Shown: positions 41,101 through 77,100, counted from the first letter of the stretch. The stretch: DNA of 124,000 nucleotides from Octopus vulgaris (GCA_951406725.2 OX597818.1:27796001-27920000); one strand, 5' to 3'. The notes: generated by a model not told the origin, from the sequence alone. Numbers and translations: made by a program.

Positions 41101-44100
41101 AATATAGCATCAGTGGTGCTTCTGCCTGGCACAAAACCAAACTGCATCTAATCTAGGCTAACTCTCTGTCTAATTAGTCTGGCTATGACCCTCTCTGTAA
41201 CTTTCATCACCTGATCCAATAATTTGATACCCCTGTAGTTATTTCTACCTAAAGCATCACCTTTCCCCTTGTAGCAGTTGACTATGGTGCTGTTACATCT
41301 GTCATTGGATACGACTCCTTCATGAACTACCTGATTTACGATGCAGGTGATAAGATCATAACCCACACCACCCAATATTTTAAGCATCCCAGCTGTGACT
41401 TGCAAGACTACAACAAACAGATGGAGGTTGAGAACTGAAACCTTATAAATCCCTACCTACACACTGAACTCATTGCTGACTTTCATCTTGCTAGCTGAAA
41501 CTCTTTACATGGCTTGTACAGTCCTCACAAACCATTTACCTATGTCTCATCTCCATGCAGCATTGCAGTTCGAACACAAGTGTCATACAACCTGGTTAAC
41601 AACATCTGGTTATCTGGCTGCTAATCCATGCTTCAAATACATATTCATGTAACACATGCTATCATGGGGAAATAAATGCAAGTGAACAATGGAATGTGTG
41701 TGTATGTGTGTCTGTATGTGTTTATATATGTATATATTTGTGTATGTTCATGTGTGTATACACACACACACACACACATTTACACGTAGTTAAGGTTATG
41801 AAAGCTTTCCCTACCTTCGTAACCTTAATTGATTTACCCAAGACATCTGTTCACTAGAACAACTGGTCCTTTCATTGGGTCGATACTGAAAAGACTCTCA
41901 TTCTCATGGAATCTTCATATCTAATAGCTTTCCATTGTAGCACTTGTGTCCCTCTAACTTTTAAGGATCAGTAATTCCAAGTGTGCCATTATCCACCAGT
42001 ACATAACTCTCTCCTGATATAAATTTGCACATTGATTAGTCAGTTGATTGTTAACATTGATGGTGTTGAAAATAGTTTTAATAGAATTTATTAGTAATTT
42101 GTCATTTGAGAAGAATTCAAAATGGGAAAAATGGTGAAACATGACATGATTTGGGTAATTCAGTTTCAGTAATATTAATGGGACCTGTAAATATTTCACA
42201 AAATTGATAGTAACCCTATTGGGTTATTTCTGGAAACTTTATCCAAAAAACCTGAAAGCATAACCTGTGTTATGTCTGTATGGAAAGATAGTCACACATC
42301 CTAAAATTCATTGAAAAATGAAAGAAATTGGAATACAATGATTACTTAATGCACTATATATACAGTTTATACACTTGATGCACAATTTTATAGACTTAAT
42401 ACACAGCACTCCTAAAATAAATATTCACTCTTATTTTTCCATTTTCCCCGTAAACAAACAAGAAAAATATCTTGTACCTAAGATACAGTCTTTAGTAAAA
42501 TTGCATATGTCTGCCATGTAAATAAGCGTTAATATTTCACTGAATTGCACTTACGTGCATGCGTTAAGTGACAGGTAATATAAAAATTTGGTTCAATCTT
42601 TAAAAAAATACCCTTTTTACTATCCAGTCACCACCACCACTGTCATCTCCTCTCTCTCTCTCTCTCACTCCTCTACCCCCCCCCCCCCACTGCCTTTCTT
42701 TAACCTCCATATTCGAACATTACCTCTCTACTAAAATTATAATTTTAACTCTCCTCCTCTAGCTTCAACTAAATTTTAACCACATAATATATATTACGAT
42801 CTCCCTATCACATGTCATGGACGCTTCTCTCTCCTTCTTTTTCTTTTCCCTCTTCCTGTCTCACTCTGTGCCTTATCCTCTTTTTCTCTCTCCTTTTTCT
42901 TTCTCTTCTCTTTTGCTTCAACAAATCATGTGAAAACATTACAATTACATTCCCTCTACCTCATAACATGGATGCTTCTCTCTCCACCCCCTTTTTCTCT
43001 CTCCCTCTTTTTTTCTCCTTCTTTTTCTCTAATCACATGAGAGCATTACCAATGGGCTAAGTAATGCAATGACAAGTAGAACTATTATAATATTGATTAG
43101 GCAATAAATATCTTGTACATTGAAATTTCTCATTAGAGAATAAGAACTTTTCTTATCTGAGAATCAGAAATTAAAACTGGTGCCTGATATGTGTTTATAT
43201 AGATATGAATATATATGTGTGTGCATGTGTGTGTGCTTGTGTGTGTGTGCATGTGTGCGCATGTGTGTGTGTGTGCTTGAGTCTATCATGTGTGTTCAGG
43301 TAGTCTCAGCACAGCCCAATATATTGTAAATATCATTTATAGCCATGTATCATATTCATTATTTTCTTTTCTTAAAGACATGGATGATGCTTATGTTAAT
43401 GTTCTAAGTAAGCATATAAACAATACTTTACTAAAATTACACTCTTTAATGCACAAGTTCATCCTTTTATTTTATTTTAAGTTCAGTCAGAACCATTAGT
43501 GTTAATACTTCTTTGTTTTAGATTCATTTTCGAGTCCTGTTGCTGGAATCAGTCCTGGGGAAATTAGCAAAAGTTTTAGCAGATTCTTTGTGTAAAATAT
43601 ACGGTTTAATAACATGTGTATGCATGTGCAAAAATATAACTTTGGATATGTTAAAATTCTACTCATAAGTGTGGCATGGCTGTATGGTAAGAAGCTTGCT
43701 TCCCTACAACTGCATGGCACCTTGGGCAAGATTCTTCTACTGTAGTCTCAGGCTGACCAAAGCCTTGTAAGTGGATGTGTAAGATGCAAACTAAAAGAAA
43801 CCCATTGTGTGTGCATCTATGTGTATGTGTGTTTGTGTGTGTGTGTGTGTTTCTCACCTCATCACTGCTTGACAACAGGTGTTGGTGTGTTTACATACTC
43901 ATAGTGGAGCAATTCAATAAAAGATGCTGATATATAAAGTACTAGGCTTAAAAAACATATAAAGTAAGTACTGGAGTTGACTTGTTACTTTCTGTGCAAT
44001 ATCAATATATTTAAGAACCATCTCCCCAAACAATAAAGATGCCCACTTTTATTTCATTTTTAAAGCTGAGAGAGAACAAGATGCTGAAGATAGTGAGCCC

Positions 44101-74100: not shown

Positions 74101-77100
74101 CTATGGCCAAGAAAACCCCAAGAGAGAGAGGTGGAACAGATGGATCAGAGCTATACAGACCCCTAAAAATGCTGATCAGATTACAAAAGATGTTCGCACA
74201 TGCAGTGAGTGCAAGTACCTAAACCACATTCAAGTTTAATGACGAGATATACACCTAAAAGGAAGTTGCAGCTATTAATGTCAGTATTGCTAGTGATGTG
74301 ACTATATATGGTATGGTGGGATATAAAACTCAAAGAGAAATTAGCGAAGAACTCCATAACACTAACTATGTACTCCCGCTATGTAGATGATATCAAGATA
74401 ATAGCCAAAGCACCCCTACAAGACTATGTTAATGATCTAGAAGCTAACACTATGGAGAGCATCCAGCAAATAGCTAACTCCATCCACCAGAGTATTAAAG
74501 TAATAATAGACTACCGTAACAAGTACCCAAACTATAGGCTACCAGTTTTGGACATGGAACTCTTGCTAAGAACAGTAAGGTCCAGATCCTTCACACCCAT
74601 TATACCAAATCCATGGCCTCTAAATGCCTGGTCCACAAGAAAGCAGCTATTTTGGACAACTCCAAGTGCAATATCCTTATAGCAGACTTCATGAGAGTGA
74701 TGAGGAATGTGTCTCATCTGTGCAACTGTATGGATTGGAAAGATACAGACAATGCTTCATCCACAGCATGCAGTTCTCTAGTTAAAACCAAAGGAACAGG
74801 ATTAGAGTACACAAAGGAGCCAGAGCTAAGTATGAAGCTATCATAGTGAGTGATGCAAAAGGACTAAATACAGGAAATGCAGGAGTAAATATTGGGAAAG
74901 CACAGAAAGGACCAGAAAGAAAGGTACATAAGGTCAACTTATGATATGACAACAAAAAATACCAGAGTATCATGTTCAATGATGCTACCTCTGGCAGTCA
75001 ACTAGCATACTCTTTTAGAAAAACATTAGATAAGGCTAAAGTTGTTAGCCATGCACTTTTTTGCCCCTAGGATGAACCCACAGGTTAACTAAGGTTAGGA
75101 ATATAGTGTATAGCTTATGATGTACTGAGGGGTGGTGCAGAAACATGACAGTTATTTGCATTGGAGAGACAACATGCAGCATAGGAGTGCATATAGGTGA
75201 ACACTGGTGGGAGTTCTCAAAGAAGAGAAAGGTTTGTCAGTTCTCTACCAACATGCTCAAGCAGAAAATAGCAGCTTCCTTAATAGCATAGTAGTTAAGG
75301 TATTATCAACACATAGTACTGACATGGTACTTAGACAGATCACAGAGGCTAGAAACATAGAAATAGACAGACTGAGACTCAACAGAAAACATGATTGGAA
75401 CAATAACACCTGCCACCACACCATACAACATGACGACTAAAGACAGAAGAAAGAAACAAAAAAGATACAAACAGTGTAATACATACACAATAAGTAAATA
75501 TCCACATACCTATGATAGGTATAAGAAATAGAGCTAGATAAAAAAAACTATAAAGGGCATGAATGCAAACAACATAGGAAGTGAGCCCATATACACACAC
75601 AAACACACAAAAATAACTTCACAAATGGCTGTAACAATATGAACAACACAGCCAACAATGACAACAGCAACAGCAGTAACAACAACAATATCTACTTCAA
75701 TTGCAGCAGCATGGACAATCACACAAATACAGAGCGATAGAGGAATGGTACCAAAAATTAGTGTCGTGGGCAGCAGCAGCAGCAGCAATGAGGGAAGAGA
75801 TGGGGCTGATGGCAGGGTCATAGTGTTACTAAGAACACTGACACACACACACTCACATACACATGTACACACACACACACACATACAGAAGCAAATGCAT
75901 GCACATATACGGATCTATATCAGAGAAGAAAAGAATGGACAAAGTGGAGCAAGAGCATGCATGAAAATGGAAAGTATCACTGACGAGATCTCAGATGTGT
76001 GATTAAAGATATTCGGACTATGGACATGAGTTAGAATAACAGCCATAAATGAGTGAAGAACTAATATATAGTGCAGGTGTTTATTTGGCAAAACGAAAAA
76101 AGAAGTGACCTTTCCAAAATAAAACAATATTTGTTTCAACACATAGTTTCACATCAGGAATATTGCAACACAAATTCTTAAACTTGTGTGTGTATATATA
76201 TATATATATATATACATATATACATGATGGGCCTCTTTCAGTTTCCATCTCCAAATGCACTCTGAAGGCTTTGGTCAGCCCGAGGCTATGAGGATATAGT
76301 AGATGACATTTGCCCAAGGTGCCATGCTGTGGGACTGAACCTAGGACTATGTGGTTGGGAAGTAAGCTTCTTACCACACAGCCAGACCTGTGCCTATTGC
76401 ATCTTTTATCTATTAATGTATGTGCGTGTATGTGCATGAGTGAATGTGTTTGAGTCTATTTCATTAGCATTTATTCTGGTAGTATCGACACACTACTAAC
76501 ATATTTTAGATATTATCTATAATTATCTTATATATTTTTCTTTTTTTAATTTTTTAAAGATTTGGAGGATGTTTATGTGAATGTTCCAAAGACACCTGAT
76601 GGTAAGTATATAGGCAATCCATTACTAAAATTATATTAATTTCCTAGCTCTGGGTCTGGAATCAGTCCTGGTAAAGTTAGCAAAACTTTTGGAAGTTCTA
76701 TTTATACAAATAAAGAAAATACTGATAAAACTAGTTTTGAGTTCACTAGACATGAAACACAATGTATAGAACAGTTTTGCAATGGTGAATCTTTCACACT
76801 TTGATCAGCTACTGTTTTGAGTACCCATAACCATTCCTACTTATGGACACCACTGAAAAGAAAGTAACAGAATGGCTTCTCTTAATGGTATCATGTTTAA
76901 ATATCAATATAATATCATATTTGAGTAACAGAAATAGTTGTGTACTATACTCAATACTCAGAGATATTAACCTGTTGAGGGACACTGACCAGATCTGTGA
77001 TGGTGCAAAGTCCCCTCTCAACCAAAAATAATGTGGTGGTGGAACAATGTTGTTGACAAGGCTATTAGAGAAAAGAAACAGGCATGGAAGGACTGGAAGA

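What the first reader, a model, noticed from the sequence alone, without database searches (positions are those of the whole stretch)
43378..76601. Expandable array of ~20 frame-neutral tyrosine-motif microexons builds the tail of an IgSF receptor
Seen: ten A-type exons (60/54/42 nt, EPxYLxM/V) and ten B-type exons (42/30 nt, DDxYVN/SV), mostly alternating, with homologous flanking introns; 17 have canonical AG/GT sites. Every intact cassette is phase 1-1, a multiple of 3 long, and ends in G or A, so any subset splices in frame and no junction can create a stop. Established: acidic residues before Tyr favour Src/Syk-type kinases, pYxxM binds PI3K p85 SH2, and pYxN binds Grb2-family SH2 (YVNV is the LAT motif). 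Inference: a receptor whose number and mix of SH2 docking sites is set by exon copy number and combinatorial skipping, i.e. diversity on the signalling side rather than the ectodomain as in Dscam. I do not recognise this architecture from a described gene.
Basis: partly seen in the sequence, partly recalled or inferred. Interest (0 to 1): 0.92.

Follow-up and report, generated by a model that had tools for sequence, protein, structure and literature searches.

The report
Octopus receptor tail built from tyrosine microexons
The repeated mini-exons are real: they build the tyrosine-rich inner tail of an uncharacterised Octopus cell-surface receptor, and database gene models chain and skip them, so the number of likely signalling docking sites can vary.

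Summary
Observation confirmed to the base. Twenty cassette copies (10 A, 10 B) lie on the + strand at 43378-76601. Seventeen keep AG/GT, a length divisible by 3 and phase 1-1; 15 of those keep the tyrosine.

The gene is the Octopus sinensis LOC115212116-type multi-Ig type I membrane protein. Its NCBI model (XP_036359227.1) splices 12 cassettes of this array into one ORF: ten identical to the window's, two differing by 1-2 residues. The gene belongs to a tandem family found only in three Octopus species.

In O. bimaculoides, the ortholog and three paralogs carry 3, 8, at least 14 and 3 annotated tails. These differ by whole 14- or 20-residue cassettes. Exon-number growth and cassette skipping are therefore supported by annotation, though not checked against reads here.

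SH2 docking remains inference. Seven of 8 usable A cassettes are YxxM. Only 4 of 9 usable B cassettes are YxN; the amplified young copies are YVSV.

The architecture is not unprecedented. Chicken BG genes build IgSF tails from 13-36 exons of 21 nt, and PECAM-1 splices tyrosine-bearing tail exons. New here are two alternating phosphotyrosine-type motifs amplified as A-B doublets. No paper on these loci was found.

Verdict: real, undescribed, a new variant of a known kind. Interest is moderate to high.

The parts
4854..5102 (+). Ig-domain exon, phase 1-1, 249 nt
   Evidence: AG/GT. Identical but for 1 residue to P0050 residues 494-575. Family proteins score Ig_3/I-set/Ig_2 in Pfam.
7220..7474 (+). 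Ig-domain exon, phase 1-1, 255 nt
9668..9976 (+). Membrane-proximal Ig (I-set) exon, phase 1-1, 309 nt
13598..13699 (+). Transmembrane exon ([34 protein letters not shown]), phase 1-1
18695..18713 (+). Juxtamembrane exon 1 (AVKCKK), 19 nt, phase 1->2. Must be used together with the next exon.
25080..25096 (+). Juxtamembrane exon 2 (D-ISSAKG), 17 nt, phase 2->1
33503..33544 (+). C-type cassette ([13 protein letters not shown]), 42 nt, phase 1-1, YxxI-type motif
39331..39372 (+). C'-type cassette without Tyr ([13 protein letters not shown]), 42 nt, phase 1-1
43378..43407 (+). B1: 30-nt B cassette ([10 protein letters not shown]), 12-nt in-frame deletion, AG/GT. In no protein model.
44066..44125 (+). 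A1: 60 nt, [19 protein letters not shown] (YLSV)
   Evidence: Exact in P0050.
44368..44409 (+). B2: 42 nt, [13 protein letters not shown] (YxN)
47814..47873 (+). A2: 60 nt, YLPM
48114..48155 (+). B3: 42 nt, [13 protein letters not shown] (YVSV)
57449..57508 (+). A3: 60 nt, exon identical to A2 and A4; solo copy at a duplication breakpoint
58365..58424 (+). A4: 60 nt, YLPM. Lies in the 1.4-kb block that is 97.6% identical to 46982-48382.
58665..58706 (+). B4: 42 nt, YVSV
59414..59475 (+). A5: decayed copy; donor GT lost, length not divisible by 3
60407..60466 (+). A6: 60 nt, YLPM
60711..60752 (+). B5: 42 nt, [13 protein letters not shown], donor GTAAAT
62478..62519 (+). B6: exon fragment without a donor, in the loop between 81-nt inverted repeats (62323-62403 / 62560-62640)
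64207..64266 (+). A7: 60 nt, [19 protein letters not shown]
64765..64806 (+). A8: 42-nt copy, 18-nt deletion, donor GA (broken)
65051..65092 (+). B7: 42 nt, Tyr->Phe ([13 protein letters not shown]). Still part of the O. sinensis model.
70613..70666 (+). A9: 54 nt, [17 protein letters not shown]. In no protein model.
70884..70925 (+). B8: 42 nt, [13 protein letters not shown] (YxN). Orthologous cassette in O. bimaculoides.
72577..72630 (+). A10: 54 nt, [17 protein letters not shown]. The acceptor moved 6 nt downstream relative to the 60-nt copies.
72881..72922 (+). B9: 42 nt, Tyr->His ([13 protein letters not shown]). The His is also present in the O. bimaculoides ortholog.
76560..76601 (+). 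B10: 42 nt, [13 protein letters not shown] (YxN); last cassette
85455..85465 (+). Coding start of the terminal exon: after a phase-1 cassette it reads G-Y-Q-stop
   Evidence: Family C-termini GYQ/DYQ/SYQ.

Best explanation
The window holds the 3' two-thirds of an Octopus gene: the O. sinensis LOC115212116 type, orthologous to O. bimaculoides LOC106879981. It encodes a multi-Ig type I membrane receptor.

The acidic, proline-rich cytoplasmic tail is assembled from an array of phase-1 microexons. Each microexon carries one acidic tyrosine motif:
- A cassettes (60 or 54 nt): [DE]x[SN]EPxY[LV]x[MV].
- B cassettes (42 or 30 nt): D[ML]D[DG]xY[VI][NS][VI]S[KR]KP[DG].

The ancestral unit is an A-B doublet with a 200-250-nt intron. 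Unequal crossing-over amplified it in this lineage to five or six young doublets, on top of older 3' cassettes that are shared with O. bimaculoides.

Because all cassettes are symmetric in phase, the splicing machinery can include or skip any of them. Annotated isoforms of family members do exactly that.

Inferred mechanism: ligand-driven clustering lets a Src- or Syk-type kinase phosphorylate the tyrosines. The YxxM sites then recruit PI3K p85-type SH2 domains and the YxN sites recruit Grb2/Drk-type SH2 domains. The YVSV sites have an unknown partner. Cassette number and mix would then set docking valency and pathway balance.

Shown here: exon structure, orthology, family membership, isoform models and motif conservation. 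Inferred: phosphorylation, SH2 partners and biological role.
For: Structure.

Gene identity: the Ig/TM exons equal P0050 apart from 2 residues. Ten cassettes are identical and two differ by 1-2 residues.

Same exon-per-cassette layout in two other loci: L001 (O. bimaculoides LOC106874069) and L002 (O. sinensis LOC115212119), with A-B introns of 204-235 nt.

Isoforms: LOC106874069 X1-X8 differ by independent loss of a 14-residue C cassette, a 20-residue A cassette and a 14-residue B cassette, plus two alternative ends. LOC106869178 has at least 14 tails of 101-223 residues, with 7-13 Tyr, 3-5 YxN and 1-4 YxxM. The ortholog LOC106879981 skips one B cassette. Junction residues change as phase 1 predicts.

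Constraint on the motif: among 44 matches to the B-cassette pattern (one is a spurious hit from an Ig domain), D at -3 occurs in 39, Y in 37, N at +2 in 38, S at +4 in 36 and P at +7 in 36.

Intron flanks (-90..-1 and +1..+30) are as conserved between paralogous genes as the exons, at 65-75%, against 34-50% further out. This fits regulated cassette exons.

Independent assembly: the O. sinensis reference model contains the same five doublets with small differences, so the array does not collapse.
Against: - No transcript reads could be examined. The isoforms are database models.
- P0050 itself is chimeric: its N-terminus and last ~180 residues come from neighbouring paralogs.
- B1 and A9 are in no model.
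- Exons are no better conserved than their flanks, at 60-97% depending on copy age. Four cassettes shared with O. bimaculoides are only 71-83% identical in protein, while orthologous non-coding DNA is about 91-92% identical. Outside the motif core, evolution therefore looks close to neutral.
- The amplified young B copies have Ser, not Asn, at +2, so the Grb2 reading does not cover them.
- Nothing here shows phosphorylation or SH2 binding.
Confidence: 0.72

Rival explanations
1. Mostly dead weight. Only the old, species-shared cassettes and one or two doublets are used. The young copies (A2-A8, B3-B7) are neutral by-products of unequal crossing-over in a large intron. The long chain in the O. 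sinensis model is then an artefact of model building.
For: - Three of the copies are already broken (A5, A8, B6) and B7 has lost its Tyr.
- Exons evolve no more slowly than introns.
- P0050 is a chimeric model.
- All annotated isoforms of the O. bimaculoides ortholog contain only two 5' doublets.
Against: - Eleven of the 14 young copies (A1-A8, B2-B7) keep frame and both splice sites.
- The YxSV B cassette is present, and alternatively spliced, in the O. bimaculoides ortholog (DIDDVYDSVSREPE).
- The paralog LOC115212119 uses three identical tandem A cassettes in its models.
- Splice-site flanks are conserved.
Confidence: 0.2
2. The tyrosine motifs act mainly as YxxPhi sorting or endocytosis signals (AP-2 mu2 type), making a multivalent endocytic or scavenger receptor, rather than as phosphotyrosine docking sites.
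For: YLPM, YLCM, YVNV and YVSV all fit Y-x-x-hydrophobic. The rule itself is established knowledge.
Against: - AP-2 does not need Asn at +2, yet N is kept in 38 of 44 B variants.
- It does not need the acidic run before Tyr (D at -3 in 39 of 44), which is typical of tyrosine-kinase substrates.
- One such signal normally suffices, and there is no obvious reason to keep two distinct motif types.
Confidence: 0.12
3. The functional unit is the A-B doublet acting as an ITAM-like pair that recruits a tandem-SH2 kinase (Syk/Shark type) or phosphatase. Doublet number then sets the number of such units.
For: - Every A->B junction gives Yxx[M/V]-x8-YxxV here, and YLEL-x8-YVNV in paralogs.
- The doublet with its short intron is the conserved duplication unit in all three loci.
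Against: - The +3 residues in this gene are M and V, not L or I.
- Isoforms split doublets freely: A or B is skipped alone.
- A-A and B-B neighbours occur.
- The invariant Asn at +2 is not an ITAM feature.
Confidence: 0.12
4. Assembly artefact: the near-identical blocks are haplotype or mis-assembly duplications.
For: One 1.4-kb pair is 97.6% identical, and its A exons are 100% identical.
Against: - Copies span 68-98% identity, with different transposon insertions between them.
- The independent O. sinensis reference gives a protein with the same five doublets but different residues.
- Paralogous loci show the same kind of array.
Confidence: 0.03

Closest known systems
Chicken BG genes (butyrophilin family)
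   Same: An IgSF multigene family in a tandem cluster. [quoted passage not shown]
   Different: BG exons encode heptads of a coiled coil, not tyrosine motifs. There is one repeat type rather than two alternating types. No sequence similarity.
PECAM-1 / CD31
   Same: A multi-Ig type I receptor whose tail is encoded by short exons 9-16, with tyrosines in exons 9 and 12-15. Alternative splicing of exons 10-16 changes function; exon 14 encodes 19 residues (PMC2132561).
   Different: The exons are unique, not tandem duplicates. The tyrosines are ITIM-type. No copy-number growth. Only generic Ig similarity to this family; the best solved-structure hits are ICAM-1, Robo2 and Dscam at E 1e-6 to 1e-4.
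Botryllus FcoR/fester allorecognition receptors
   Same: Invertebrate-chordate innate receptor families whose tails carry ITIM, hemITAM and other Tyr motifs. Alleles and splice variants switch the motif repertoire (PMC11507803).
   Different: Switching is by intron retention or new stop codons, not by an array of symmetric cassettes. Different ectodomains.
Titin PEVK exon array; collagen-type short-exon arrays
   Same: Tandemly duplicated short symmetric exons whose differential inclusion tunes a disordered segment (PMC6469411; collagen from my own knowledge).
   Different: A mechanical spring, not a signalling tail.
Multi-site pTyr scaffolds (LAT, Shc, Gab/IRS, PDGFR kinase insert); copy-variable tyrosine-phosphorylation repeats of the Helicobacter effector CagA
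   Same: Several YxN and YxxM sites on a disordered acidic segment recruit Grb2 and PI3K, and valency matters. In CagA the repeat number varies and changes SH2 binding strength. All of this is from my own knowledge; none was tested here.
   Different: In those proteins the sites are not one-per-exon cassettes. No homology.
Dscam1 hypervariable exon clusters
   Same: Tandem exon duplication inside an IgSF gene is used to generate isoform diversity.
   Different: Dscam clusters are in the ectodomain and mutually exclusive. Here several cassettes of one type are included together.

Membership tests
IgSF type I membrane receptor | Ig-fold domains in the ectodomain | tested here: met
   Pfam Ig_3 E 1e-21 and I-set 5e-15 on the ortholog P0017. 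The window exons align to those residues.
IgSF type I membrane receptor | Single hydrophobic transmembrane segment followed by a basic stop-transfer stretch | tested here: met
   Exon 13598-13699 encodes [28 protein letters not shown].
Grb2/Drk-type SH2 docking site (pYxN) | Asn at +2 after Tyr | tested here: inconclusive
   Met in B1, B2, B8 and B10. Not met in B3, B4 and B5 (YVSV), B7 (FVSV) or B9 (HVSI). Across the family, N at +2 occurs in 38 of 44 variants.
Grb2/Drk-type SH2 docking site (pYxN) | Tyrosine is phosphorylated and binds the SH2 domain | not testable with these tools
   Needs phosphoproteomics or a peptide pull-down.
PI3K p85-type SH2 docking site (pYxxM) | Met at +3 after Tyr | tested here: met
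   Seven of 8 splice-competent A cassettes are YLPM or YLCM; A1 is YLSV. Binding was not tested.
ITAM | YxxL/I, a spacer of 6-8 (up to 12) residues, then YxxL/I | tested here: not met
   The spacer of 8 fits at every A->B junction, but the +3 residues are M (or V) and V in this gene. Paralogs come closer, with YLEL-x8-YVNV.
ITIM | [S/I/V/L]xYxx[I/V/L] | tested here: not met
   The -2 residue is D or G in B cassettes, P in A cassettes and D in the C cassette.
hemITAM | [E/D][E/D][E/D]xYxxL (definition as quoted in PMC11507803) | tested here: not met
   B has D at -3 and D or G at -2, but M or L at -4. The +3 residue is V in 19, I in 10, D in 8 and L in only 2 of 44 variants.
Chicken BG-type microexon tail | Tail encoded by many tandem frame-neutral microexons, with variable number | tested here: met
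   Searches compared with PMC4046983.
Chicken BG-type microexon tail | 21-nt exons encoding coiled-coil heptads; V-type ectodomain of the B7/butyrophilin family | tested here: not met
   Exons are 42, 54 or 60 nt. The tail is 27% Asp+Glu and 10% Pro. The ectodomain has seven to eight I-set/C2-type domains.
Dscam-type exon cluster | Mutually exclusive choice of one exon per cluster | tested here: not met
   Models include several A and several B cassettes together.
PECAM-1 orthology | Sequence homology beyond generic Ig domains | tested here: not met
   No PECAM-1 hit among solved structures at E<=1e-3. Tail searches find only Octopus proteins.

The most novel reading that the evidence does not exclude
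An Octopus-restricted receptor family uses exon-array amplification plus cell-type-specific combinatorial cassette splicing as a valency code on the cytoplasmic side. It would set how many PI3K-type, Grb2-type and other phosphotyrosine docking sites a receptor displays. That could include thresholds for multivalent SH2/SH3 condensates. This would be the signalling-side counterpart of ectodomain diversification by Dscam or protocadherins.
Probability: 0.3. Interest if true: 0.78.

Novelty: new variant of a known kind. Interest (0 to 1): 0.6.

Why it matters
If the isoform models reflect real, regulated transcripts, this family is a natural experiment in tuning signalling valency. The same ectodomain would carry anywhere from about 5 to 15 or more docking tyrosines of at least two specificities, changed on an evolutionary scale by unequal crossing-over and on a cellular scale by splicing.

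That makes a long-standing question testable: how the number and spacing of phosphotyrosine sites shape receptor output. The test would be in an animal with a large nervous system and a purely innate immune system.

It also adds an unstudied, fast-evolving, tandemly clustered IgSF family to cephalopod biology, where the protocadherin and zinc-finger expansions have had the attention. For annotation, it shows that 30-60-nt exons in such arrays are easily missed or mis-chained. The O. sinensis model here is chimeric across three paralogs.

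Tried and rejected
- Orthologous DNA from O. bimaculoides for a dN/dS test. The exact-protein look-up failed for three isoforms. For the longest product the gene spans 258 kb, so no DNA was returned. Only protein-level comparison was possible.
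- RNA structure bridging the cassettes. RNAalifold on 12 A exons with flanks gave no consensus pair, so flank conservation is not explained by predicted pairing.
- Tail homologues outside Octopus. A composite-tail word search and a full HMMER scan of 1.84 billion representatives found only O. sinensis, O. vulgaris and O. bimaculoides proteins, plus unrelated repeat proteins (ankyrin-like and bacterial 'TLFDGDYxNLTN' repeats).
- Pfam has no family for the tail.
- Literature. No paper mentions the six locus names. Searches for octopus or cephalopod IgSF tyrosine tails returned nothing specific.
- The apparent frame problem of the 17-nt 'ISSAKG' exon was resolved by finding its 19-nt partner exon. 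It is not a pseudo-exon.
- The O. vulgaris adhesion-GPCR models that carry these cassettes could not be checked, because the locus is too long.
- Exons being more conserved than introns was expected as a sign of selection and was not found.

Full report
WHAT IS THERE. The window is AT-rich, transposon-laden animal DNA. On the + strand it carries three Ig-domain exons (4854-5102, 7220-7474, 9668-9976) and a transmembrane exon (13598-13699). All are phase 1-1 with AG/GT.

- Six A copies are 60 nt and two are 54 nt. One is a 42-nt copy with a broken donor (A8). One has lost both donor and frame (A5).
- Eight B copies are intact at 42 nt and one is 30 nt. One is a donor-less fragment (B6).
- Seventeen copies are splice-competent, and fifteen of those keep the tyrosine. 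B7 has Phe and B9 has His.
- The order is B1 A1 B2 A2 B3 A3 A4 B4 [A5] A6 B5 [B6] A7 [A8] B7 A9 B8 A10 B9 B10, with broken copies in brackets.

The strict A motif occurs eight times, all on the + strand inside the array. It occurs once elsewhere, on the other strand, in all six frames of the remaining sequence.

WHICH GENE. A protein spliced from these exons finds annotated 'uncharacterized protein' models in Octopus bimaculoides, O. sinensis and O. vulgaris.

The best match is XP_036359227.1, O. sinensis LOC115212116 (P0050). Its Ig-to-TM part equals the window's apart from two residues. Its tail contains jx1 (AVKCKK, window 18695-18713), jx2 (ISSAKG, 25080-25096), a C cassette ([13 protein letters not shown], 33503-33544) and a Tyr-less C' cassette (39331-39372). 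These are followed by A1 B2 A2 B3 A B4 A B5 A7 B7 B8 A10. Ten of those cassettes are letter-identical to the window's and two A cassettes differ by one or two residues.

The small differences mean the window is an independent sequence: a sister species or another individual. The array therefore survives in an independent assembly.

The model is chimeric. Its N-terminus and its last ~180 residues belong to neighbouring paralogs, and its gene range runs across LOC115212119.

Orthology to O. bimaculoides rests on two lines:
- Window 99844-123859 aligns at 91-92% to the 5' flank and first exons of LOC106874069.
- The preceding gene there, LOC106879981, has 85-88% identical Ig exons and the same 3' cassettes, including the His variant (DMDDAHFNISRKPD), followed by GYQ.

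A FAMILY WITH THE SAME BUILD. The family has seven to eight Ig domains (Pfam Ig_3, I-set, Ig_2, C2-set_2). Similarity to solved structures is only generic (ICAM-1, Robo2, Dscam).

In two fetched loci every cassette is its own exon, and A-B doublets are separated by 204-235 nt. The loci are L001 (O. bimaculoides LOC106874069) and L002 (O. sinensis LOC115212119). L002 has three identical tandem A exons, all used in its models, plus partial extra copies.

Tail-only searches find nothing outside the three Octopus species. One was a word-index search with a composite tail. The other was a full HMMER pass over 1.84 billion representatives.

ARE CASSETTES REALLY SKIPPED? Database isoforms say yes:
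- LOC106874069 X1-X8 are the combinations of three optional cassettes and two alternative ends. The optional cassettes are DVEDVYATISSEPS, TVEEQYAEISEPKYLEMKQQ and NMDGAYVNISKKPG.
- LOC106869178 has at least 14 different tails of 101-223 residues, with 7-13 Tyr, 3-5 YxN and 1-4 YxxM.
- The ortholog of the window's gene skips one B cassette (DIDDVYDSVSREPE) and has two ends.
- LOC106874055 has three tails.

The junction residue changes as phase 1 predicts...PS|TVEDQ becomes ...TG|AVEDQ.

Two annotation generations show such variants, in the UniProt A0A0L8... entries and in the later XP_0528... entries. NCBI's pipeline normally issues alternative variants only with transcript support; that is my own knowledge. 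I could not inspect the reads, so this is strong indirect evidence and not proof.

EVOLUTION. Self-comparison shows a repeat unit of about 1.0-1.4 kb containing A, a ~240-nt intron and B. Pairwise identities run from 68% to 98%, and LINE and SINE insertions lie between units. This points to repeated unequal crossing-over over a long period.

The 3' cassettes (B8, A10, B9, B10) predate the split from O. bimaculoides. The 5' doublets number two in all annotated isoforms of the O. bimaculoides ortholog and five in this lineage, plus the solo copies A3 and A7.

The 54-nt A exons arose by a 6-nt downstream shift of the acceptor, GAAG|CTGTGG becoming GATGCTGTAG|.

Exons are not better conserved than adjacent intron. 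For U1 against U10, exon A is 67% identical, the intron 77% and exon B 69%. Shared cassettes are only 71-83% identical in protein between species whose aligned non-coding DNA is ~91-92% identical.

What is conserved is the motif core. Among 44 matches to the B-cassette pattern (one is a spurious Ig-domain hit), D at -3 occurs in 39, Y in 37, N at +2 in 38, S at +4 in 36 and P at +7 in 36.

The splice-proximal intron is also conserved. Between paralogous genes, A exons are 68% identical, their -90..-1 flanks 65-67%, their +1..+30 flanks 75%, and sequence further out ~40%. For B exons the figures are 72%, 68%, 66% and 34-52%.

Conserved flanks are typical of regulated alternative exons (my own knowledge). 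An alternative cannot be excluded: exon and flank may both drift while distal intron is replaced by insertions. No conserved RNA pairing was predicted.

HOW IT PROBABLY WORKS. Shown:
- The tail segment encoded by all splice-competent A and B cassettes plus GYQ is 281 residues: 27% Asp+Glu, 10% Pro and 6% Tyr, with 17 tyrosines.
- A cassettes give YLPM or YLCM in seven of eight usable copies, and YLSV in A1.
- B cassettes give YVNV in four copies (B1, B2, B8, B10), YVSV in three (B3-B5), FVSV in B7 and HVSI in B9.

Established rules (my own knowledge): acidic residues before Tyr favour tyrosine kinases, pYxxM binds PI3K p85 SH2 domains, and pYxN binds Grb2/Drk/SEM-5 SH2 domains, with a strict need for Asn.

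Inference: clustering leads to phosphorylation and then to multivalent recruitment of PI3K- and Grb2-type adaptors, with cassette number setting valency.

The copies amplified in this lineage are the Ser variants, which should not bind Grb2. The expansion therefore multiplies YxxM plus a site of unknown specificity.

Every A->B junction produces Yxx[M/V]-x8-YxxV, which has ITAM-like spacing but not ITAM residues. Paralogs come closer, with YLEL-x8-YVNV. This is a secondary hypothesis. It is weakened by isoforms that split doublets.

YxxPhi sorting signals are another rival. The conserved Asn and the acidic run argue against them as the main function.

COMPARISON WITH WHAT IS KNOWN. The genomic principle has a close precedent in chicken BG genes. 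These are an IgSF multigene family whose tails are encoded by 13-36 exons of 21 or 24 nt, with the number varying between genes (PMC4046983).

The functional principle also has precedents:
- PECAM-1 has tail exons 9-16 that are alternatively spliced, with tyrosines in exons 9 and 12-15 (PMC2132561).
- Botryllus FcoR tails switch ITIM and hemITAM motifs by splicing (PMC11507803).
- Titin PEVK arrays show the same evolutionary mechanics (PMC6469411).

None of these is homologous to the Octopus family. The ITAM, ITIM and hemITAM definitions are not met, and Dscam-type mutual exclusivity is not met.

New here is the combination of two alternating phosphotyrosine-type cassettes, amplified as doublets to ~20 copies in one gene, within a lineage-restricted receptor cluster, with many annotated cassette-skipping isoforms. 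No paper on these loci was found.

VERDICT. This is a new variant of a known kind, with interest about 0.6. The decisive test is junction-level transcript evidence, followed by phosphopeptide-SH2 binding.

Noticed in passing
window 62323-62640: The B6 exon fragment (about 50 nt of B homology, no donor) sits in the 156-nt loop between 81-nt inverted repeats that are 89% complementary, flanked by (AT)n. It looks like a foldback or MITE-like element that has captured a piece of a cassette exon. The arm sequence occurs nowhere else in the window.
   Followed up: partly
P0051/P0052 (O. vulgaris 'adhesion G-protein coupled receptor G6-like', 12-Mb contig): These LRR+GPS+7TM models continue after the seventh helix into C, A and B cassettes (STEDNYATIPDEALT, NEEQYAEASGPSYLELKPA, DMKISYVNVSRKPD...). 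They also contain intron-like read-through and a transposon ORF at the end. This is either exon shuffling of the tail cassettes onto a GPCR or, more likely, a fused gene model. The locus is too long to fetch.
   Followed up: partly
P0050 (XP_036359227.1) versus window and L002: The O. sinensis model for this gene is chimeric. Its N-terminal Ig domains are those of the LOC106869178-type paralog. Its last ~180 residues are the tail of another paralog. Its range runs across LOC115212119.
   Followed up: partly
window 99844-123859 (exon at about 123178-123477): The next family member starts here. This stretch is orthologous at 91-92% to the 5' flank and first exons of O. bimaculoides LOC106874069. 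The first Ig exon reads EIDMVKFVRKKQPTALEC....
   Followed up: yes
window 85455-85530: The terminal exon is read in two frames within the family. After a phase-1 cassette it gives G/D/S-Y-Q-stop. After the phase-0 'D' exon of paralogs (…NIYENNNQRNE) the same exon gives ITSEGPC…. The window copy is open in that frame too ([24 protein letters not shown]).
   Followed up: partly
window 72881-72922 (B9) and 65051-65092 (B7): Tyr-less cassettes persist with intact splice sites. The His variant B9 is shared with the O. bimaculoides ortholog, and a similar one occurs in LOC106874055. The Phe variant B7 is included in the O. sinensis model. They may act as spacers or decoys.
   Followed up: partly
paralog proteins P0011, P0019, P0006, P0055: Many paralog A cassettes carry a second tyrosine eight residues upstream (EEQYAE[IVA]SxPxYLE[LM]). 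In some cassettes this gives YAEI or YAEV, a YxxI/V motif followed by a 4-residue spacer and YLE[LM]; other copies have A at +3. The window's gene has D or H at that position.
   Followed up: no
window 23186-24633; 66749-67125; 5090-5460: Very long trinucleotide microsatellites lie inside introns: about 1.4 kb of (ATG)n, (TCT)n with ~126 copies at 99% purity, and a ~370-nt GC-rich trinucleotide tract directly after the first Ig exon.
   Followed up: no
window 49332-52404 (- strand), 77001-79028 (+), 106766-107869 (-), 61817-62178: The introns hold LINE-type reverse-transcriptase ORFs of up to 531 residues and a 60-nt tandem array of a SINE-like unit. These insertions separate the cassette units and date them relative to each other.
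   Followed up: no
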